Source of the DNA: Podarcis liolepis | Taxonomy: Eukaryota | NCBI GenBank assembly: GCA_965112155.1 | Contig: OZ218102.1 | DNA: 64,000 nt | Strand: one strand, 5' to 3' | Shown here: positions 4,315 to 51,000 of the stretch, in pieces | How positions within the stretch are numbered: position 1 is the first letter of the stretch | Layout of the letters: each line of letters starts with the position of its first letter | Program-made: the position numbers and the translations under genes | The notes under the pieces: model-generated | What the model was told of the DNA's origin: nothing | What the model saw: only the letters and a program-made list of their open reading frames with translations | Databases searched by the model: none

Positions 4315-4519
4315 CGCCTTATAACAAGTTAGATTTTTCTCCATCTAGGTCAGCATTGTTTGCACAGAAAGGGAGTAGTTCTCTAGGCTTTCAGGTGGGA
4401 GTCTCTCCCAGCCGTATCTGGAGATATAAATTCAATTAATAACAACAAGACCACTGCTAGGGATTGAACCTGAGACCTGTTGCGTGCATGACAGGTGCTC
4501 TGCCACTGAGATATGTCCT
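4315..4519 (-). mobile_element. Old tRNA(Ala)-like SINE, degraded
   Basis: Reverse complement resembles 6991-7170 (CTCAGTGGCAGAGCACCTG, CAGGTTCAATCCC, ATCTCCAGAT, GCTGGGAGAGACT). Confidence 0.65.
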
Positions 4520-5534
4520 TCCTCCATTCAACTAATTGAAACATTTCAACTCATACCCAACCCTACAGATCATTTTCCAGCCATTGATTATTAGAGCCTA
4601 TAATGGGTGGGTGGGTGACTATGTCAGTTATCTTGCTATAGCTACTATGACACATTGATGGCTACAAAGAAGAAAATGCACAGCTTGCCGAATGATCTTT
4701 TGTCGTTTCCCCAATATGTTAGGGGAAAGGCATTAAAGTGGGCATGGCTATAGGCCAGGGCAGGGCAGAAGGTGGATCAGGATCTACTGGTAACTCTCCT
4801 TGTGATCTGCAGTAGATCAACAAGAATTCTGACTCCCAATTGTTTGGCAATGGCAACAACTAAATGGCTCCTTCTTTCAAATCCAATTAAGAACACTTGG
4901 GTTAACCAGGAATGGATTTTGATGCAGGAGGACTGTAAGTTCAGCTGGTACTCAAAACAAATCCTTGTGCTCAGCAGCTACTTCAAAGTACCCTATTCTT
5001 TCATCTTAAGTGTATGTCTTTTACACCTGGCCCCAGGTGGCAGATCTTGAGGTTCAAGTCAAACACAAAATAGGTACTACAAGTCTGAAGTCTGGCCTCC
5101 CCTCTAAAGGCTTTTAAGTCCTTTCCAGCTCCACTACCCAATACCTCTTTAAAAAGCAGAGGGGCACCCAAGGACATACAGCATGCAAAGTATTGCCATG
5201 TTCAACCGTCAAACCCAGAAGGAAATTCAACTAATGCGATTTAGTTCTCTAGCAGTTTTCAGAGTGTGCAATGCTCTGCAGCTCTTGCCTCATTTATCCT
5301 CCCAGCAAGCCTGAAAGGTAGGTTAGGCTGAGAGCACACACACCTTGCTCAAGGCCACCCACTGAGCTTCAAAGCCCAGAATAGCTTTGCTCAAACCAGA
5401 TGCTCTTTCCATGGCAGAATGCAGGCTGGTGAGCTGATTTGAGGCTTTGTAGTTCATTCATCGATATTACCGGTACATTGTCCTCATGGAAGGCCACAAA
5501 GAACCTCCCTGGATTTAAGGGAGCTGTTTCCCCA

Positions 5535-6528
5535 CAGTATTTTCCCGTGTATTGGACGAGGTTTTTTTTTTACTACAAAATTGTGTCAAAAAACTGGGGT
5601 CATGAGTCCTGGCTTCGTGAGGGAGCCCTCGCTTGTGTGAGGCGGCGACGCTTGCAAGGAGGTGATGCCATGGCGGCCCCTACGCAGCCCTGGAGCCCTG
5701 AGGAGCTCCACGGAGACACCCTGCCCAGGAAGGAGATTGTCTGCTTCCTGCAGGAGCAGGCGGCGCACAAGTTCCTGTCAGAGCACAAACTACTAGGACA
5801 GATAAAAAATGTGGCCAAGACAGCCAGTAAGGAGCAGCTGATCATGGCATATAACGAGCTATTTGAAACCGAGAGATTACATGGTACTGAGAGTCCAGAG
5901 CATGTAACAGAGCAAGTGAAAAATGTCAAAATTGATGAGGAGAAGCCCAAGGAGACAAAGCCTGAGGAAGCTGTGGATGAGGGCCCCCCAAAATAAGTCA
6001 GTACTGAAGAAGGGGGATAAAATCAACATTCCCCAAAAGGGTGATGTCGTTCAATGTTGGTATGCAGGGAAGCTGCAAGATGGAACAGTCTTCGATAGTA
6101 ATATTCAAACAAGTTCAAAGAAAAAGAAAGCTGCAAAACCACTGAGCTTCAAAGTCAGCGTTGGAAAAGTGATACGAGGCTGGGACGAAGCTCTGCTGAC
6201 CATGAGCAAAGGGGAGACTGCTCACCTGGAAATCGAACCAGAATGGGCTTATGGGAAGAAAGGGCAGCTGGATGCCAAAATTCCACCAAATGCAAAACTT
6301 TTCTTTGAAGTAGAACTGGTGGATATTGAATGATGGGTTGCTCCTCCTGGTCCCCCATCTTTGAAAACTGTGAAGATGCTCTTGGAAGTCCAGGAAATGT
6401 GTTTGTGGTCTTGTTTCCCACACAGTAAGGGTGGGATGGCGGGGAAACTCATTTTCTTAAAACTTGAGTCCCCCAAAATAGGGGGGGGGTCTTATACACG
6501 GGGATGACATATAGACGGAAAAGTACGG
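5535..6528. mobile_element. Tc1/mariner (Tc2-type) non-autonomous element enclosing the FKBP3 copy
   Basis: Left end CAGTATTTTCCCGTGTAT and right end ATAGACGGAAAAGTACGG are inverted repeats (14/18). TA follows the right end; the left flank is CA. Arms 5535-5601 and about 6448-6528 align with the ends of the MITE at 42580-42736. Confidence 0.85.
5670..6333 (+). pseudogene. FKBP3: Processed (intronless) FKBP3/FKBP25 copy with a frameshift and stop at about 5994
   Basis: ATG 5670 in gccATGg context; MAAPTQPWSPEEL...KKEQL-like N-terminal domain to EGPPK*, then +1 frame SVLKKGDK...VIRGWDEALLTMSKGE...IPPNAKLFFEVELVDIE*. No introns, whereas FKBP3 is multi-exon. The expected KYTKS codons are reduced to AAA T AAG TCA, a 5-nt loss. 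Confidence 0.93.
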
Positions 6529-6990
6529 TACTCACCCATTTTATGGGTCTGGGTTATGCAATACTACAGCCATAGAGCTCACACAATATCCCACCAAACC
6601 ATTTCTTGCTGTTCGCCTCATCATTACTGTGCGTATAAAAAGTGTTCAGGGATGGTCACAGGGCCTGAATTGAATACAAAGCCATGTGGATCCATTGCTT
6701 ATGCAGACTGTTGATTTATTTTTCAAGTAAGTGGTATATAAATCTTGCTAAATACAACAGAATAAACCAGGAGCACACCAAATCCACACATCAACAAGCC
6801 TGCTAGCTGGGGGAGGGCAGAATTCTATAGGCCGTTCCTTAAGAAACCTGTGATCCATCCTCTTGACATAGAAAGCCAGGTGCTTGTGGAGACCTGCTCA
6901 GGTGCTATTAAGGCCCACAGACCCCCTGTCTTCCATCAGTCTGGGCACTGCCTAATGGGGGCAGGGGGAGGGGCTTGAGTGAGGTGGCTA

Positions 6991-7170
6991 AGGGCCATAG
7001 CTAAGTGACAAAGAATCTGGTTTAAATGCGAAAGGTTCCAGGTTCCACCCCCAGCATCTCCAGGTAAGGCTGGGAGAGACCAGTGCCGGAAATCCTGCAG
7101 GCTGCTGCCAGTCTGTGTAGGCAACACAGAGCTAGACAGGTCTGACTCAGTGCAAGGCAGCTCATGTTCC
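6991..7170 (+). mobile_element. Old tRNA(Ala)-like SINE
   Basis: GGGCCATAGCTAAGTG head, CAGGTTCCACCCC B-box remnant, GCATCTCCAGGTAAGGCTGGGAGAGAC body; related copies at about 4315-4519 (-) and 7608-7930 (+). Confidence 0.7.
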
Positions 7171-7607
7171 ATACCTCCAGGTTTCTGGCTTACGGTCAAC
7201 CTGCTCACAGCCTGTCTGCTACTGACCGGCCAGCCTGTCTCATCCCCCACCTGCCTTTATGATCTCTTGCCTGACATCTGACAGGCACGCTGCAGGGAGT
7301 TGTCTGCAGTGCAAACAGCTGCAGAGGAAGGCCCCGGTTTCTTGCCATCTTTCTCCCTTCTTTTTCACACGCCTGCACCTTCAAAATTCCAAGCTGCTTT
7401 CCAATAACCCAAATTAACTCGAGTTTAGGTTTAACCTCTATGTTAATTAGGGAATGCTTGCTAAGCTCATTGAAGATAAAAAGGGGCTAAGAGAAATTCT
7501 CAGTATAAAATCCAAGGGAAAGCAAAACGAGGGAGGGAGGAAAGAAGGCTAAGTTAGGAGAAAAAGTAGCAATGAAGTCAGCTTTGTGATCAGAGAAAGA
7601 CTGGGGA

Positions 7608-42577: not shown

Positions 42578-42579
42578 TA

Positions 42580-42736
42580 CCGTATTTTTCCGTGTATAAG
42601 ACTAGGGTTGGTTTTTTTTACCAGAAAATTAGGTTTAAAATTGGGGCTTATCTTATAGACAGGTAGTGCTAAAGAGTGTTTTCTTAATTTGGAGTCTCCC
42701 AAAATAGGGGGCGTCCTATACACGGAAAAAATACGA
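42580..42736. mobile_element. Tc2-type MITE, empty 157-bp copy of the family that flanks FKBP3
   Basis: TA-CCGTATTTTTCCGTGTATA ... TATACACGGAAAAAATACGA-TA; TA target duplication. Confidence 0.9.
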
Positions 42737-43535
42737 TAAATGGTGATGGAGAAATTTTTCATCCCTAAGTTGCAAGCTAAGAAAACAGTTGCAAACCTTA
42801 TGGACACTGGAACCAAACTGTCTTTACTCTGTAGTTATAATAAAAAATGAGATTAAGTATTCATCGTAATGCTAAAAAAAGGGCAGAATTCATGCTCATA
42901 CTCTGATGCTCCAACTGTGACAATATATTTGGCTCTAGTGTTAAAGCAGTAATAATGGCAGCTGTGTGTTTCTCCAGACAGCAATTTACAAGTAAATTTA
43001 CAATTTTGGGAGATTAGGCTCACATTATGTTTTTGTATGAGGTCCACTGCTGAGAGAACCCTAAACCACAGGATTTCTAGGGCATAATGGAAATAACTGT
43101 ATCCACTTAGATTTACGTAGCTGTGCTTCTGTTTACAAAACCCCCAAATAGAACTGTTCTTACTGTAGATTGTGCTCTAGTGTTAACTTGCCCGCATAAA
43201 TTGTTTTTCAGTGCCAACTTCTCCATCGCCAAGCCCTAATCACAAGATCAGGTTCATTCATTTTACTGAGACACGGGCTGCTATTGACCAGAGCACCAAA
43301 CTACACATAAAACAACAATGGCCAGAATGCAAATGCCATGTTGTCCAAATGCAGTGTTATGCATCCAGAATCGCTGTAGCTGGGTCCACAGAACGTCATA
43401 GATCAATAGAATATTCTGTACTATTGTATAAAGGTGTCTCTGCAGCTTCAGAAGCCCGTATCTTTTTGTGGCAAGAGTGTAGCTGCACCACTATCAACAG
43501 CATAGGTTGTGTATCTGATCACAGGTTACATTATA

Positions 43536-43891
43536 CAGTGGTGCCTCACAAGACGAAATTAATCCGTTCCGCGAGTCTCTTCGTCTAGCGGTTTTTTCGT
43601 CTTGCGAAGCAACCCTATTAGTGGCTTAGCAGATTGGCGCTATTAGCGGTTTAGCGGCTATTAAAGGCTTAGCGGCTATTAAAGGCTTAGCGGATTAGCG
43701 GCTAAAAGGCTATTAGCGGCTTAGCAAAAGGGGGGGGGGGCCGAAAAAAATCGGAACACTCACAAGACGTTTTCGTCTTGCAAAGCAAGCCCATAGGGAA
43801 AATCATCTTGCGAAGCAGCTCAAAAACAGAAAACCCTTTCGTCTAGCGGGTTTTCCGTCTTGCGAGGCATTCATCTTGCGGGGCACCACTG
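43536..43891. mobile_element. Tigger/pogo-type MITE
   Basis: TA-CAGTGGTGCCTCACAAGACGAA ... TTCATCTTGCGGGGCACCACTG inverted ends; the right flank is TT rather than TA. Confidence 0.88.
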
Positions 43892-43961
43892 TTGTTACAT
43901 ATTCCAGCGTTCATTCTGGACTGCTACAGAATAGGCTGTTAGCATAAGGGATATTTATGTA

Positions 43962-44658
43962 CCATATTTTTTGCTCTATAAGACACACTTTTCCCCTCCT
44001 AAAAAGTAAGGGGGAATGTGTGTGCGTCTTATGCAGTGAATGCAGGCGGGAGGCTCTGCTCAGCGCTCCCTTTAAAGAGCCGCACGCACACTCTGTGTGC
44101 TCTTTAAAGGGAGCGCGACTCTTGGGGGATCCTTAGCCACGCGCAGCCTCTCCTGGGCAGGGGATGAAGGCGCACGGCCAAAGAAGAAGCCAGGACAGCC
44201 AGCAGGATGCATCCTGCTGGCTGTCTTTGCTTAAGCCAGAGAGGCTGCGTACAGCTAAAGAAGCCAGGACAGCAAGCAGGATCCCGCTGGCTGTTCTACC
44301 TTCTGGCTTAGCCACGGGATAACGGGGAGCCTTTATCCCACTGCCCTGCGGAGGCTTCGCGCAGCTATCCCTGGCTTTTGCAGGAGGTGGGGGAAGGGAC
44401 AGAGCGCGCGGCTCTTGCGGGAGGAAAGCCAGTAGGCTTGCTTTTGCTAAAGCCAGGAGGGCAAGAGGGATTGGTGCGCACCGATCCTGCTTGCTCTCCT
44501 GGCTTCAGGGATAGCCCCACAAAGCCTCCTGAGCGAAGATGGAGGAGCGCTCCCTCTTAGCTCAGGATGCTTTGCGTTCCTTTCCTATTTCTTGTTTTCC
44601 TCCTCTAAAACTAGGTGCGTCCAATCGTCTGGTGCGTCTAATAGAGCGAAAAATACGG
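43962..44658. mobile_element. Tc2-type non-autonomous element with GC-rich palindromic interior
   Basis: TA-CCATATTTTTTGCTCTAT ... ATAGAGCGAAAAATACGG-TA; arms match 47910-48076. Confidence 0.9.
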
Positions 44659-47600
44659 TACTTTTCTTTCTCAGAAAAACGAACAGAACAGATTTAAAAG
44701 TCCATGAACCCTCCACATGCCTTTTGCTGCTGCAATTTCCTCCTTAAAGCTCTGCCTGCTCCAGTATTCCATAAGTCTATTCCCCTAACCTGAACTGTGC
44801 CTCATTTCCTGGCTTGACCACATCCTGATGAGCTTCTTCTCAAAACAAGACAATATATTAAGTCCCTGGAATAAGCTCCCCATAACCCATATGTGATTCA
44901 GATTTGCTGGCTCTAACTCTTGAACCAAGAGATTTTCTTTACAGAGTGACTCCGGAAGCGTAGAATTCCCCATATAATTTGTCTCCTAAGTGAAGGCCCT
45001 TCTCTTTGCCTTGCCAACCTTTGAATGGGAGGGTACTGGAAGGGCCACCCACACATTAGATGTTCAATAACCTACACACTAAGCTGAAAACCAAGTATGC
45101 AGGAGATTTTCACATTCTTCAAGCATGAATGAAAATCCATGCCTGGCCTTTGCAAAAGAAGGCAACCTAGATGGGGGGGGGGGGAATCAGTGTGGGAGGG
45201 GAAGAACCCAATAATTCATTACTGCACTCTCTTTTATCTAAAAATTATAGCTTTAAAAATGGCAATTAAGCATGCCTTTTGTTTCAATTACTTGTATTTT
45301 TGTGCCATCCATCTTGGCCTCTCCCTGCTCCTTCCCAAAAGCGCAAGTAAAAGGTGGCACAAGTTTTCTTTTTTTGCAGTAACTAGCACGTAAAAATATT
45401 GTAAACATCTCCACCAGACTGAATGCTTCACCCAACCAACACAAATAATTCATGATCCTCGGTTTGCATCCAGAAAGAAATGAAACAAAAAACTGACAAA
45501 AGCCAAGGCTGCTGTGTTAGGAGAGGGAGAGCATTTGAATGAGAGCAGTGTGCCGGAAATGCCCCAGTTTGAAGACTGCATATCTAGCATTTTATGGAAC
45601 TGGAGGGGAATCTGAGATTAAAGCTCATTCCCTAGTGATTGAAGGATTGTGGGAGGTGTAAGTGTGGGCAGTTGTCAGATTAATTCTTTAGATGATTAAA
45701 TTCTTTTTGTTTCTTTAAAGCTGTTTGTAGTCATGTTTGAAGTCTCTTCATTCTGAGCGAGTGTAATGCTGCAGTTACCAAGGTGACTTTTGCTGACTTT
45801 CAACTATTTCTTCCCCCATCTTCTGTTCTTACCAACAGCCTGAATTGGTTTTTAAATCTTGTGAACTGAGATGAACAACAGTGCTGTTAGCCGCAGTGCT
45901 GTTAGCTGCAGCCACATTAGACTTTGGCACTGGGCTTGTGTAGCAGTTGGCCAAACTCGTAACTTGCAGCAAAACTACACACTGCAGCATCTCCTTATCT
46001 TTTTGCTATATGCAAAATGACTGAAGAAACAACCTGGTTAAAACACGCCATGACCACATGCACAAACCTGCAACCACCGTTGGTCCTCTTGGCACATTAG
46101 AAATGGGTGGCTGAAATCAGCACCCCTTTATGCCAATTAGTAAAAATCTTTAGGCCCCTGGAGATATTCCAACATTTACTTGCTACACAAAGTTTAACCA
46201 TTCCATTCTTGGTATAAAATAAAAAAGTCACATGCACAAAACTACTGCAGACACAGAACTCCTTGCAAACTCTTACTTTGCAGCAAACTATACTTTGCAA
46301 TTTTATCCAAACCAGGCAAATTCTGGTTTGCAAAAGCCAGAGATTGCGAGCAAAACAGAGTTCACAGGTAGCTGAAGAAGGAATCTAACCACACAAATTC
46401 AAGGCTCAATAATATAATGCCAAACCACAGTTTGATGCTACATTTGAGCTGACACTATGTCCATTTTATATGCTAGGATAGTACAATTCAGCAAACAGGA
46501 AAATAATAATTGGATGTTAGTAGAGTTTAGCTTCCATGTAGTGCAACAACCTTGCCACTGTGAAAGTCAGTCTCCTCCGCTTCACAACTGAACTGGAAAA
46601 AAGACAGCATTTGAGCACTATTAAGCTGAGTAAGACATTTATACTTCAATTTTGCCATATTCATAGTTGAGAAAGCCTTACTGCCTAGAATATTGCTTTG
46701 GTTAACCCATTATTTAAACAGCTTTTAGATTCTCATACCACACAACTTCCCTGTGTTTCACCTGAACAAATGGTGCACTCACACTAATTCCATGTTGTAT
46801 CAGACTACAAATGATCTTTAGAACATTCTCACTGAGAAAAGGTGTTTAACAAATACATGAAAAATAATTTGAGTTGCATTCAACTAAGTCCTACTCAAGA
46901 GTAAAACTGGCACCAACCCTTTTATTTCTAATCCCATTTTGAGGTATTGAGACCATGCGTTTGATCTGCATCTCCTAGATTTCTAGTGGGATGCAGAGGC
47001 AGCTTTAAATATGTTAAGGTTTCTGGTGCAGGATTTATTGTACTGAGAACAATTAAGAAGTCTGGCTGATCTTTGCTACTCTGAGCCAGGGCATTTCATA
47101 CCAGCCCATTATGCTGAAAGCGTGCTTAAGACTGTTGCCAGTTCTGACAGTTGTGTGCCCGTGCTAGCCTTTCTTCTGACATCCATCACAAAGTATGCAC
47201 CAGAAAGAATAAAATACAGCTTCAGCATACATAACCATTCTAATACTCCAATTTTACTACATATAGCAGTTCTCTCTTATCCATTATTTTGGGCATTTCA
47301 TTTGGCCAAGAGGCAGAGAACTAACCTTTTCCATGATGGTGTATATTATGATAACTGGAAGTAAGAGAGCTTTTCATTTTTCAAATCCTGACTGTTTGTC
47401 TGAGGTGCTCCCACGGTTCCCCTCATTTTCCTTAGAAGCTGCATATCTTAACTCTCCATCTTACTCATTGATCTGCCTTGCCCTTGCTCCAAAACAATAT
47501 GCAATGCATGGCTACCTAAACTGTGTTCTAGCTGCATCTGGGTGGGCTTAAACAATCCAAACCACCATCCTTAACAAGACCCTAATCCTAAAGATTTGTT

Positions 47601-47909
47601 CTGGTTCTGAGATTCTGAAAAAAGTCTCCATGTCCGTGACAGTACACTGCCATGGTTGAATTTGCTCTATTTGCAGGTGAAAAATGCTTGGGATCAAGCT
47701 ATTTGAAAGGCTTGGCATAACATAGTTTAAGAACTCCTTTCCAAACTGAGAGCAAGAGTACTGGGTAACCAATAAGAATACTTTTTGCAGGTTTGCTAGT
47801 CATACGTTTCAGCATATACACTGAGTCAATAAGTGCTATGAACAAAAACATAATTTTGATAATTTTGTCTATAGGCCTCCACTTACTAGGCTAATGAGAA
47901 AAGAACCTA

Positions 47910-48076
47910 CCGTATTTTTTGCACCATAACACTCACTTTTTTCCTCCTAGAAAGTAAGGGGAAATGTCTGCGTGTTATGGAGGAAATGCCTACGGGTGGC
48001 ATGCCTACGGATTTTCCTCCTCTAAAAACTATGTGCGTGTTATGGTCGGGTGCGTGTTATAGAGCGAAAAATATGG
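47910..48076. mobile_element. Tc2-type MITE, short 167-bp copy of the 43962 family
   Basis: TA-CCGTATTTTTTGC ... GCGAAAAATATGG-TA; shares TTCCTCCTA.AAAGTAAGGGGAA and TTTTCCTCCTCTAAAA.CTA.GTGCGT with 43962-44658. Confidence 0.9.
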
Positions 48077-51000
48077 TACATCACAGGTAGCAATAACCTT
48101 CTTTAGTATGCTCTGAAGAGTTTAAGATCACACACAATGTAAGATATATTGCTCTGGTAGGGAACTTGTCTTCAGCTTAAAGTTTGTAGACCTAATACCA
48201 TGTGCCACTATCCTTGGCCAAACCAAAGTCCAATCCGAAAGGTAAATTCTGTGGCCAGTGCCAGATGCTTCTGATCAAGTGCATGGAAACCTGCAGAAAA
48301 AACCAGTCTTCTTTAAACAAACAAAACAAAACAAAACCTGAGGATACTAGAGGCCTGTTTAAGAATTGATGCAAGTAATTTAGGCTGCCACCATAACCTC
48401 ACTAAGCTGGGAGTGAACCCCATCAAATTCAGTAGAACTAAGTAAACATGGTTAGAATTGCTCTGTTAGATAAATTACTTCCTTTCAATAACTTTCCTTT
48501 GAGAGAAACTGAAACAGTAATTAGAAAGAAGACTCATAACTAGTGTTCATGTTAATCCACATACTACCTGCTTTATCAATAGTAACTGGTTCTTCATATA
48601 GCTCTGAGAACATATCCAAAAGCATTTACAAAACTGAAAGTCTTTTCAGCTATCCACCAAACTGAGCACACATACATCCCACCAATCCCCCCCAGAACAC
48701 TGGGAAGTAGCTGCATTTGATTCATGCAGAATACAGGAGAATATTTTCCATCACTATGTGCCATAGGATCAAGTAAAATGGCAAAGGATATTGATTCCTG
48801 TGCTTGTTTGCTCCCAGCAGTTGCTGGAAGCCAAGCATGTGAAAGGATTCTCCCTTTGGATGTAAGGCAACTGGGAATATGGCAACAATCACCATGCCAT
48901 CACTTCCTTACTTCCACTAGCTTAAAAGGCCAATAGCTCAGTTCAGAGGTAGGTCTCCTTAAATATCTGAAGCCCAAGGAAGCAACATTCATGCAATCCC
49001 ATCTCTAGCCCAGCCCAGCACAGACTGTATTGCAGTTTATTGAGTATGCAACAGAGGGCGATCTAAGGCTACTTCATGGAAGAAAGAAAACAAATATTCC
49101 CTGTTAACTGTTATTCTTAGACTCTTCTGTTCAGTTCCACACACAGGACTGAATCTGCACAGTTCCCCCTTCCTCTATAACCATCTGGAAGCAAATAGTA
49201 GGGCACAGTAGCTTCTCATTTAGTTATTTCACACCACCGAAAATCTGCAATTCAAATCATGTCAGTTATATTCCTCTTGAGGAGGAGAGGAGTACAATGC
49301 AATTCCAACATAAAAGGTAAGAAACTTCATTTTCTTCATGACGTGCGAGCCTACATACAGGAGACCAGCAAACTGGTTATATGGAAAAATCTGTCAATTA
49401 CACAACTTAAGAACTGCCTGTTCTACTGCTGCAGCCTCTCTTGGTTGGAGGACCCTAGTGTAGGCTGGATGATCTTTAAGAAGATTAAGAAAGACCATGT
49501 TGCCCTCCTGAAATGTCTGTTAGGTATTAGCCTTACCAGAATGCAACAGAGGATAACAAAGACAATCAGCCAGACTACTGTACATACAAAGTCTACATCT
49601 CTGAGAAAGACTGGCAAGATACCAGAAGACCTTTTTGCTATTGGCAAAACCTGTGGAACAGCTGGGAATTTTGATAATTCCTGGTTCTGATTAAACGAGA
49701 AAGTAAGGGCTTGACAAAACACAGTGTGGAGAGAAAGAGTATGGAATACAAAGCAAGTTATGAAGGCTTCTTAGGCTGCATCAAACCTATCCTACAACAA
49801 CCGCTCACGTTCCTTTGCTTGTTCATAATCTTATTCTTTGCTAACAGTACACACCACCTCTGTGGAGTTTATTCAAACACCCTCAAGACGCATGTCACTG
49901 CTCTTTATTCCAGTGAACTGACTTGTGACTTGGGTTCTGAGACCACAAACAACCTCCCTTTCAATGAGTATGCCAACCTGTCACAAGTATTTAGAGCACT
50001 CTGGAACAGAATCTTTGACAAGGGTATAAACCACATGTTGTCTGAAAGCAATATTCCACCACCATTTTGGGGTGGCTCTAAAATATACATTTTTGGGGAG
50101 GGGTGAAAGTAAGCTATTAAAGTTCTAACAAACTATGACAAAAGGCACTTGGAAGTAGTAGTAGGCGTAGTAGTTGTCACAGCAGTTATTATTATTTAAT
50201 TAAATTTATACTGTAAAGCCCATCTAAACTCAACTTTAAAAAACCCCACCCCCTCTCTTTTCTTGTAACAGGCAACAACAAACTTCCTTTTGTGTACCTG
50301 GAAATTATCATTTTGGGACCACCCTACTCTTTTGTAAGTCTTTGTACATCAGAGGCCAGATTTTCCCAACCTGATGCCTTCCAAATGTTTTCAACTACAA
50401 CTGCCACCAACTAGCACAACCAATAGTCAGGGGGTGGTGAAAGCGGTATCAAAAACATCCGGAGGACACCAGGCTGGTGAAGCCTATCAGATTAGAACTA
50501 CCTGGACTCAGTGCATCTCTAGGAAACACTGAAGTATGTGTTTCTCGTTCGTTTTGCTGGCATCCCCACTGTCTCAGGGATAGCTTTTATTGTTAATCAT
50601 TAAATTGCCATTTTGTTACACTCTCTCAATAAAACTCCATTTGCATTCTTCTCTGTGTTGTTCCCTGTATGCCTTACATGAGGGCACTAGACTAAAACAA
50701 GGCAAAGCTACTCATGCTATACTCCTGTGTATTTTAATAAGTGAGCTAGCTCTACCAGATGGACAGCAGCTTATCCTCTGGCAGAACAGGCAGGGATGCA
50801 GTGGGGAAGTGTCTCCCTAGCACACGTAAAGGGAATATTTTATTCCCTGAACAGAGCAGCCATCTGCAGACGTGTTTAGGATGTGTGGTTACAGCAAGCT
50901 GGGGCAGGCAAGTAGAGACAAGCTATATATACTTCTGATATTCCTTTGAAGGGACAAAGCCCTACAATAAAGGAAATCTACCGCTAAATCAGGAATCAAG

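What the first reader, a model, noticed from the sequence alone, without database searches (positions are those of the whole stretch)
5535..6528. Spliced FKBP3 cDNA packaged inside a Tc2-type DNA transposon (Pack-TIR-like element with mRNA-derived cargo)
Seen: the whole intronless FKBP3 coding sequence plus short flanks (about 5602-6445) lies between a 67-bp left arm and an 80-bp right arm. The arms carry inverted ends and align with the two halves of the empty MITE at 42580-42736. There is no poly(A) tail, and the left arm breaks off at GGGGTC, so some internal MITE sequence is missing. Known: LINE-made retrocopies usually have a poly(A) tail and a target duplication, and described Pack-MULE/Pack-TIR cargo is mostly genomic DNA. 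Inferred: a cDNA, or an earlier retrocopy, was copied into the MITE during gap or break repair. That would give a unit a Tc2/pogo transposase could move, joining RNA-based and DNA-based gene duplication.
Basis: partly seen in the sequence, partly recalled or inferred. Interest (0 to 1): 0.9.

Follow-up and report, generated by a model that had tools for sequence, protein, structure and literature searches.

The report
FKBP3 pseudogene nested in a MITE
A dead, intron-free copy of the lizard FKBP3 gene sits in the middle of a small cut-and-paste transposon remnant; the layout is real, but it looks like a one-off accident fixed at one place, and nothing shows that the transposon ever moved the gene.

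Summary
Bases 5602-6447 are a spliced FKBP3 copy: 5'UTR, BTHB domain, FKBP domain and the first 114 nt of the 3'UTR. They lie between a 67-nt arm (5535-5601) and an 81-nt arm (6448-6528) of one TA-flanked MITE. About 32 nt of MITE interior are missing. There is no poly(A) tail, no poly(A) signal and no target duplication at the inner junctions.

Two corrections. The coding sequence is broken: a 5-nt deletion after 5994 shifts the frame and gives a stop. The cargo also ends inside the parental 3'UTR, which runs on for at least 665 nt in the mRNA.

Public reads show the same filled locus in a second individual and in another species. They show only one other FKBP3-like sequence, the intron-bearing parent. 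A second individual carries two further deletions. The copy differs from the parental mRNA by 4.8% with a neutral pattern.

Best reading (0.4): a cDNA patch joined into a break in a resident MITE, the non-classical, endonuclease-independent kind of insertion. Mobility of the loaded element is unsupported, though cut-and-paste transposition leaves it unrefuted. The pre-insertion site in outgroup lacertids would decide.

The parts
5533..5534 (.). CA, the degenerate left copy of the TA target duplication of the MITE
   Evidence: Read from the sequence. The five family ends found in the window by a pattern that itself begins with TA, plus the right end of this element, all start at TA.
5535..5601 (+). 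Left arm of the MITE (67 nt), with terminal inverted end CAGTATTTTCCCGTGTATTGGAC and an A6 run at 5588-5593
   Evidence: Aligns to 42579-42646 at 79%. Other family copies in reads match up to 5601 and have many different flanks before 5537 (table 7).
5602..5669 (+). Part of the cargo derived from the FKBP3 5'UTR
   Evidence: The 24-nt 5' end of an mRNA contig matches 5616-5639 uniquely with 3 mismatches. 5602-5615 is assigned by exclusion.
5670..5996 (+). FKBP3 codons 1-108 (BTHB domain), ending in a premature TAA at 5994-5996 caused by a 5-nt deletion
   Evidence: Pfam PF18410, E 5.6e-27. 90% identical to Podarcis FKBP3. The parent has ATACA after 5994 (table 4).
5998..6333 (+). FKBP3 codons 112-222 (FKBP_C domain) in the shifted frame, with the original stop TGA at 6331-6333
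   Evidence: Pfam PF00254, E 4.7e-30. 94% identical to Podarcis FKBP3. ORF table.
6334..6447 (+). First 114 nt of the FKBP3 3'UTR. The cargo ends in AAA, inside an A-run of the parental UTR. No poly(A) signal and no tail
   Evidence: The parent DNA contig matches to 6447 and then runs on unlike. An mRNA contig matches to 6435 and runs on for 665 nt (GTGAAAAAGC...) (records 7 and 22). Signal and A-run scan.
6448..6528 (+). Right arm of the MITE (81 nt), with a doubled subterminal motif and terminal inverted end ...GACGGAAAAGTACGG
   Evidence: 6452-6501 aligns to 42679-42725 at 82%. 6510-6530 matches the terminal motif with 1 mismatch. Other copies begin to match at 6448/6450 and end at 6530 (table 7).
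6529..6530 (.). TA, the right copy of the target duplication
   Evidence: Read from the sequence.
42578..42738 (+). Uninterrupted member of the same MITE family, used as reference. 42647-42678 is the interior that the FKBP3-bearing copy lacks
   Evidence: Only the terminal 23 nt pair when it is folded.

Best explanation
A processed FKBP3 pseudogene entered an already resident copy of a TA-flanked (Tc1/mariner-superfamily) MITE as a single event. It has stayed at that one locus since.

Most likely route: a reverse-transcribed piece of spliced FKBP3 mRNA was joined into a double-strand break inside the MITE. The piece ran from about the 5' end of the mRNA to an A-run 114 nt past the stop codon. 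End joining took out about 30 nt of MITE interior. It left no target duplication and no tail.

This is the 'non-classical' or endonuclease-independent kind of LINE-RT insertion, also called a class 2 templated sequence insertion. The copy was dead on arrival or soon after, and has decayed neutrally since.

Shown: the anatomy, the mRNA origin, the 3' truncation, the lack of tail and duplication, the decay, and the same filled locus in two species.
Inferred: that the break came first, that a LINE enzyme made the cDNA, and that the MITE was resident before the event.

The broader claim is a one-off nested retrocopy that does not work as a Pack-TIR. It covers this route and the first rival, and I put it at about 0.65.
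For: (1) mRNA origin. The match to RNA contigs is unbroken across exon joins, while the parent DNA contig leaves the match at 5982 (records 12, 19, 20).

(2) 3' truncation. Parent sequence continues beyond 6447 for at least 31 nt in DNA and beyond 6435 for at least 665 nt in mRNA (records 7 and 22). No poly(A) signal, tail or junction duplication was found.

(3) Target microdeletion. 32 nt of the reference MITE (42647-42678) are absent.

(4) These are the defining traits of non-classical L1 insertions: 3' truncation, no TSD, no tail, and target deletion in 18 of 21 cases (PMC1920257). They are also the traits of class 2 templated insertions, whose templates include multi-exon cDNAs (PMC5110952).

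(5) One locus. Contigs of a second individual bridge both inner junctions with 0-1 differences. Another species has cargo, right arm and the same flank on one contig (records 2, 6, 8, 16). Every alternative letter in the DNA run equals the mRNA letter, so the only other copy seen is the parent (table 3).

(6) Neutral decay.
- A frameshift and a premature stop.
- 35 differences in 723 aligned nt (4.8%) from the mRNA of the same species.
- 20 nonsynonymous against 13 synonymous changes.
- 19 of 33 changes are G>A or C>T towards the copy, and 13 of 33 lie at parental CpGs.
- A second individual carries a heterozygous 119-nt deletion and a 10-nt deletion (tables 4 and 5).

(7) Chance nesting is not exotic. 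Four elements with this kind of end cover about 1.2 kb of 64 kb, or about 2% of the window.
Against: The pre-insertion site was not seen. A later deletion could therefore mimic all the 'non-classical' traits; PMC1920257 states this confounder itself.

An A6 run lies 14 nt before the cargo. AAAAAACTGGGGTC (5588-5601), with bottom strand TTTTTT/G, looks like the left copy of an ordinary L1-type target duplication. That favours the classical route.

Both MITE ends are kept and only the interior is replaced. That is also the expected product of abortive gap repair after excision.

The size of the target deletion is measured against a 79-82% similar copy of a somewhat different subfamily, so it is approximate.

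Contigs cannot prove that further copies are absent. A cut-and-paste element also leaves no donor copy.
Confidence: 0.4

Rival explanations
1. An ordinary LINE-made processed pseudogene inserted into the MITE by target-primed reverse transcription, with a poly(A) tail and a 14-nt target duplication. One later deletion of at least 700 nt then removed the rest of the 3'UTR, the tail, the right duplication copy and about 30 nt of MITE interior.
For: The 14 nt left of the cargo, AAAAAACTGGGGTC, start with an A6 run. The bottom strand reads TTTTTT/G there, which is close to the L1 endonuclease site TTTT/A. At the same place the reference MITE reads TTTT/AA on the bottom strand (site consensus from PMC1920257).

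Deletions demonstrably hit this element. A second individual carries deletions of 119 nt and 10 nt, and the copy differs from the parent by a 5-nt deletion and a 12-nt indel (tables 4 and 5).

Earlier scan notes report tail-and-duplication retrocopies elsewhere in this genome (unchecked).
Against: It needs a second, large event. That event's right breakpoint must fall within a window of about 30-60 nt that spares the right arm.

The MITE is A/T-rich, so an A run near the junction has a fair chance of being coincidence.

No remnant of a tail or of a second duplication copy is left.
Confidence: 0.25
2. This is the reader's idea: the birth of a Pack-TIR. The MITE was excised by a transposase. The gap was repaired by copying the sister copy inward from both ends, and synthesis switched template to FKBP3 cDNA or mRNA. 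The result is an element with both ends, a foreign interior and a lost middle. It has not moved since.
For: Both terminal parts are kept and only the interior is replaced. No duplication or tail is expected at the inner junctions, and at most 0-3 nt are shared there.

Other family copies seem to differ in their interiors from the same points. One copy matches to 5601 and then reads GTGCTGCTGC.... Copies entering at 6448/6450 agree with one another only 68-73% upstream (table 7).

Most other MITE copies lie 85-95% from these arms (table 1). The family need therefore not be much older than the 4.8% cargo.

Template switching in gap filling is the accepted model for Pack-type capture (PMC8277862).
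Against: Captured DNA in known Pack elements is genomic. An RNA or cDNA template in gap repair has not been shown for any animal TIR element. PMC8277862 treats intronless inserts as a confounder. Its one retrogene-in-transposon case, ARF6 in MER20, was left open as possible retroposition.

No autonomous partner and no second loaded copy were seen.

Every structural trait is equally produced by a break at any time in a dead MITE.
Confidence: 0.15
3. The loaded arm-FKBP3-arm unit was assembled elsewhere and jumped to this TA by cut-and-paste transposition. That would make it a working Pack-TIR.
For: The unit is bounded by family ends and by TA/CA exactly at 5535 and 6528. Cut-and-paste leaves no donor copy, so single-copy status does not exclude one hop.
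Against: No second locus or second flank was seen for the cargo-bearing junction contigs. The junction contigs have depths of 40.8 + 39.9 and 116, like the flanks at 70-106 (contig depth is a rough guide only).

The ends are degenerate.

The locus is fixed with the same flank in two species (record 16).
Confidence: 0.05
4. The arms are not one MITE. They are parts of the parental FKBP3 UTRs, or two separate MITE fragments that happen to flank a retrocopy.
For: None found. The parental 5'UTR upstream of the stretch matching 5616 could not be read.
Against: Parental mRNA and gene contigs leave the match at 6435/6447 and do not enter the right arm (records 7 and 22).

Both arms are high-copy and have many different outer flanks (tables 2 and 7).

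They are complementary halves of the reference copy, in the same orientation and at similar identity, and their outer edges are TA flanks.
Confidence: 0.03

Closest known systems
Class 2 templated sequence insertions (Onozawa & Aplan, PMC5110952) and non-classical, endonuclease-independent L1 insertions (Sen et al. 2007, PMC1920257)
   Same: The insert is RNA-derived. It has no target duplication, no poly(A) tail or signal, a 3' truncation and a small deletion of target DNA, with at most a few shared bases at the junctions. Spliced multi-exon cDNAs are among the known templates.
   Different: Those cases were proven with the pre-insertion allele, which is missing here. They are from humans and primates; this one is in a lacertid lizard. 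The target here is the interior of a MITE.
Pack-TIR / Pack-MULE elements (Tan et al. 2021, PMC8277862)
   Same: Family inverted ends and a TA-type flank enclose host-gene sequence that replaces the element's interior. The ARF6 retrogene inside MER20 mentioned in that paper is the nearest published look-alike.
   Different: Pack cargo is genomic DNA, and the screen excludes intronless copies of multi-exon genes. Here there is no sign of amplification or movement, and the cargo is a broken pseudogene.
Classical LINE-mediated processed pseudogene nested in a transposon
   Same: It is an intronless copy with UTR parts at a new locus that decays neutrally. There is an A-rich, L1-type site 14 nt from the 5' junction.
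   Different: The tail, the poly(A) signal and the duplication are absent, and the copy stops inside the 3'UTR.

Membership tests
Processed pseudogene (retrocopy) | Intronless copy of a parent gene that has introns | tested here: met
   RNA contigs align without a break over 5657-6406. The parent DNA contig leaves the match at 5982 and runs on for 811 nt (records 12, 19, 20).
Processed pseudogene (retrocopy) | Carries UTR sequence but no promoter or intron sequence | tested here: met
   5'UTR match at 5616-5639. 3'UTR match to 6447 (record 7).
Processed pseudogene (retrocopy) | Poly(A) tail at the 3' end | tested here: not met
   No A run of 4 or more at the junction and no AATAAA-type signal in 6334-6447.
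Processed pseudogene (retrocopy) | Target-site duplication of 7-20 nt around the insert | tested here: not met
   The longest shared word between the inner flanks is 6 nt and does not lie at the junctions.
Processed pseudogene (retrocopy) | Loss of coding capacity and neutral evolution | tested here: met
   A 5-nt deletion and a stop at 5994-5996. 20 nonsynonymous against 13 synonymous changes, with CpG-type decay. Polymorphic deletions.
Non-classical (endonuclease-independent) RT insertion / class 2 templated insertion | 3' truncation of the template, no tail, no duplication | tested here: met
   records 7 and 22. Criteria as in PMC1920257 and PMC5110952.
Non-classical (endonuclease-independent) RT insertion / class 2 templated insertion | Deletion of target DNA, shown against the pre-insertion allele | tested here: inconclusive
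   32 nt are missing relative to another family copy, 42647-42678. The true pre-insertion allele was not available.
Non-classical (endonuclease-independent) RT insertion / class 2 templated insertion | Insertion site departs from the L1 endonuclease consensus | tested here: inconclusive
   An A6 run 14 nt left of the cargo could be an endonuclease site. Without the empty site this cannot be decided.
Pack-TIR (Pack-MULE-like) element | Inverted ends of one TIR family at both ends, with that family's target duplication | tested here: met
   Both ends match the family motif. TA on the right, CA on the left. 16 of 25 outer positions are complementary.
Pack-TIR (Pack-MULE-like) element | Interior derived from a non-transposon parental locus | tested here: met
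   FKBP3.
Pack-TIR (Pack-MULE-like) element | The captured piece is not an intronless copy of a multi-exon gene (exclusion rule of PMC8277862) | tested here: not met
   The cargo is intronless and the parent has introns.
Pack-TIR (Pack-MULE-like) element | Evidence of transposition of the loaded element (further copies, or an empty site) | tested here: not met
   One locus in two species, with no other cargo-bearing contig.
   TA lies next to the family ends matched in the window; the search pattern itself began with TA. The elements are 160-700 nt and have no transposase ORF.
   There is no autonomous element in the window and no repeat library at hand.

The most novel reading that the evidence does not exclude
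The FKBP3 cDNA (or the mRNA itself) served as a template when the gap left by an excising Tc1/mariner-type MITE was repaired. This would be the first animal Pack-TIR whose cargo came from RNA. It would directly link reverse transcription with cut-and-paste transposon repair, and the resulting unit could in principle be moved by a transposase.
Probability: 0.17. Interest if true: 0.65.

Novelty: new member of a known kind. Interest (0 to 1): 0.27.

Why it matters
As it stands this is a tidy, datable example of a tail-less, 3'-truncated cDNA insertion in a reptile. It shows that such non-classical insertions, or classical ones eroded by deletion, can imitate a gene-carrying DNA transposon. That is a practical warning for Pack-TIR screens, which already filter such cases out.

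It would matter more if the pre-insertion site or further cases showed that MITE interiors in this genome take up cDNA more often than chance. That would point to RNA-templated repair of transposon excision gaps, a route of gene duplication not yet demonstrated in animals.

Tried and rejected
(1) Fetching the parental FKBP3 gene of a lacertid with the look-up of encoding contigs. The parent was read instead from RNA and DNA contigs laid on the window. The transcription start and the full 3'UTR therefore remain unknown.

(2) An older 236-aa Podarcis model (P0130) as a proxy for the 5'UTR. Its N-terminus is unrelated, so it was no use.

(3) The idea that the MITE is a long palindrome whose centre is fragile. 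Only the terminal 23 nt pair and the centroid interior is open. Dropped.

(4) Rfam on 4500-7500. Nothing relevant, only one chance-level lncRNA hit in the flank. The arms are not a known RNA-derived element.

(5) A target duplication at the inner junctions. None found.

(6) An 'earlier retrocopy' as DNA donor. No third FKBP3-like sequence appears among the contigs of the same species at 85% likeness or more. This is a weak negative.

(7) The exact 16-nt word shared by 5359-5374 and 6139-6154. With E about 0.05 and no extension, I took it as chance.

(8) Relative dating of arms against cargo. The arms are 79-82% identical to the one other copy in the window, but 85-95% identical to most copies in reads. 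No firm order follows, so I make no claim.

(9) The two reading-frame pieces were always searched apart and never joined across the break. The window has no N.

Full report
**What is there**

The window holds no N. The stretch 5535-6528 has three parts:
- a 67-nt left arm, 5535-5601;
- an 846-nt middle, 5602-6447;
- an 81-nt right arm, 6448-6528.

The middle is FKBP3. 5670-5993 translates to a BTHB domain (PF18410, E 5.6e-27). 5998-6330, in another frame, translates to an FKBP_C domain (PF00254, E 4.7e-30). That pair of domains is the FKBP3/FKBP25 architecture. In a search of 5.8 billion proteins the best match is the lacertid FKBP3 cluster (Lacerta agilis, Podarcis muralis, P. lilfordi, P. 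raffonei, Zootoca vivipara). The two pieces are 90% and 94% identical to Podarcis FKBP3. They share the lacertid residues that differ in Anolis and Tiliqua. The copy therefore arose in the lacertid line. I searched the two pieces apart and never joined them.

**The arms**

5534-5599 aligns to 42579-42646, and 6452-6501 aligns to 42679-42725, of the uninterrupted 160-nt element at 42578-42738 (79% and 82%). 6510-6530 carries the family's terminal motif with one mismatch. The same motif, always starting with TA, marks five other element ends in the window and none in shuffled sequence.

Public reads make the repeat nature plain. Summed contig depth is in the thousands on the two arms and about 100 beside them. 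Other copies stop matching at 5537 and 6530, the outer ends, where their flanks are many and different. They also stop matching at 5601 and 6448/6450, the inner ends (tables 2 and 7).

The right arm's extra 17 nt are a second copy of a subterminal motif that other family members also have (loose ends at 6503). The outer flanks are TA (6529-6530) and CA (5533-5534). The reference interior 42647-42678 (32 nt) has no counterpart.

**The cargo comes from spliced mRNA and is cut short at its 3' end**

I therefore laid contigs of four public runs on 5300-6760.

Two small runs give single contigs at depth 109 and 494 that lie unbroken on 5667-6406 and 5657-6278. These runs hold 65 and 113 million letters. 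That is far too little for a genome at such depth, so they are RNA. Every listed difference turns the window's codon into the residue of the annotated Podarcis protein, so these contigs are the parental mRNA. A DNA contig with parental letters matches only 5900-5982 and then runs on unlike for 811 nt, as into an intron.

At the 5' side, the first 24 nt of one mRNA contig match 5616-5639 uniquely. At the 3' side, the parental DNA contig of the same species matches to 6447 and continues unlike. An mRNA contig of another species matches to 6435 and continues for 665 nt, reading GTGAAAAAGC....

So the cargo stops at an A-run 114 nt into a much longer 3'UTR. There is no AATAAA-type signal, no tail, and no duplication at the inner junctions.

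**It is a pseudogene**

The parent has ATACA after 5994. Its absence here shifts the frame and gives TAA at 5994-5996 (table 4).

Against the mRNA of the same species there are 35 differences in 723 aligned nt (4.8%) and two indels. Of the 33 listed coding differences:
- 20 are nonsynonymous and 13 synonymous;
- 19 are G>A or C>T in the direction of the copy;
- 13 lie at parental CpGs.

A ratio near one half of the synonymous rate is expected if the copy drifts freely while the parent changes only synonymously.

A second individual of the same species (run X1) shows further decay. Its contigs are otherwise identical to the window, but it carries a 10-nt deletion at 6264. It also has two half-depth branches, read as a heterozygous 119-nt deletion of 5603-5721 (tables 4 and 5).

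**One locus, shared between species**

In X1, contigs bridge flank to left arm, left arm to cargo, cargo to right arm, and right arm to flank, with 0-1 differences (records 1, 2, 6, 8).

In X14, the most distant of ten coded organisms that hold the stretch, one 698-nt contig spans cargo, right arm and the same right flank (record 16). Another contig carries the undeleted 5' part (record 10). Flank divergence there is 0.7-1.8%, well below the 4.8% between copy and parent. The insertion therefore predates that species split.

At every variable site in the cargo, the only alternative letter in the DNA run is the mRNA's letter (table 3). No third FKBP3-like sequence is seen. Contigs can hide copies, and the tool warns that depth is not copy number, so this is a moderate negative and not a strong one.

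**How it most likely arose**

The traits are 3' truncation, no tail, no duplication and about 30 nt of target lost. These are the defining set for non-classical, endonuclease-independent L1 insertions (PMC1920257). They also define class 2 templated sequence insertions, whose known templates include multi-exon cDNAs (PMC5110952).

I therefore favour a cDNA patch joined into a break within a resident MITE (0.4). Landing in such a MITE is not exotic, since elements with these ends fill about 2% of this window.

**Rivals**

*Classical insertion, later deletion (0.25).* Without the pre-insertion allele, a later deletion can mimic all of these traits; PMC1920257 says so itself. This locus has a hint in that direction. 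The 14 nt left of the cargo, AAAAAACTGGGGTC, begin with an A6 run whose bottom strand (TTTTTT/G) resembles the L1 nick site. They have the length of a normal duplication. The element is also visibly prone to deletions.

However, it needs an RNA or cDNA template in transposon gap repair, which is not documented. The Pack-TIR survey of 100 animal genomes deliberately removes intronless inserts as retroduplicates. It left its one retrogene-in-transposon case, ARF6 in MER20, open (PMC8277862).

*One hop of the loaded unit (about 0.05).* This cannot be excluded, because cut-and-paste leaves no donor. Nothing supports it, and the ends are degenerate (16 of 25 positions complementary).

*Arms from the parental UTRs, or two unrelated MITE fragments.* This is close to excluded (records 7 and 22).

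**Membership**

The locus meets the core definition of a processed pseudogene but lacks the tail and the duplication. It meets the testable criteria of the non-classical class, with the pre-insertion criteria open. It has the outward form of a Pack-TIR but fails that class's exclusion rule, and there is no sign of mobility. The MITE shows the Tc1/mariner-superfamily marks (TA, short inverted ends). 'Tc2' could not be tested.

**Verdict**

This is a new instance of a known kind. Interest is modest (0.27). The orthologous site in outgroup lacertids would decide among the routes.

**Unexplained**

The left breakpoint of the 119-nt polymorphic deletion lies within 1-2 nt of the arm/cargo junction.

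Noticed in passing
window 5603-5721 and 6264 (run X1): A second individual of the same species seems heterozygous for a 119-nt deletion. Two branches of depth 40.8 and 39.9 leave one upstream contig, and the left breakpoint falls within 1-2 nt of the MITE/cargo junction. That individual's retrocopy contig also lacks 10 nt at 6264. The coincidence of breakpoint and junction is unexplained.
   Followed up: partly
window 43960-44661 and 47908-48079: A second TA-flanked MITE family (ends TACCATATTTTTTGCTCTATAAGAC...) is present as a 700-nt copy and a 172-nt copy. The arms match at 82-84%. The long copy's 579-nt interior is a GC-rich array of alternating inverted arms (AAGCCAGGACAGCAAGCAGGAT). An earlier scan note describes the same kind of interior elsewhere in this genome, so this is probably a regular long family member and not captured cargo.
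   Followed up: partly
window 43535-43892: A short element with 23-nt inverted ends (ACAGTGGTGCCTCACAAGACGAA ... TTCATCTTGCGGGGCACCACTGT) and internal TTAGCGG-type and TTCGTCTTGCG-type repeats lies right beside the 700-nt MITE.
   Followed up: no
window 5359-5374 and 6139-6154: An exact 16-nt word, CCACTGAGCTTCAAAG, occurs in the left flank and again inside the FKBP domain of the cargo. E is about 0.05 and there is no extension, so it is taken as chance.
   Followed up: partly
window 5300-5348: The stretch left of the locus is a very high-copy repeat in the reads. Summed contig depth is about 9,480, against about 100 in the next bins (table 2). It was not identified.
   Followed up: no
window 5640-5656 and 6343-6354: Parental sequences of two species start to align only at 5656/5657, although the 5'UTR match resumes at 5616-5639. 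The copy thus seems to carry about 17 extra nt in the 5'UTR part. The parent of the same species lacks 12 nt at 6343 that the copy and another species' mRNA both have, which is an indel on the parental side.
   Followed up: no
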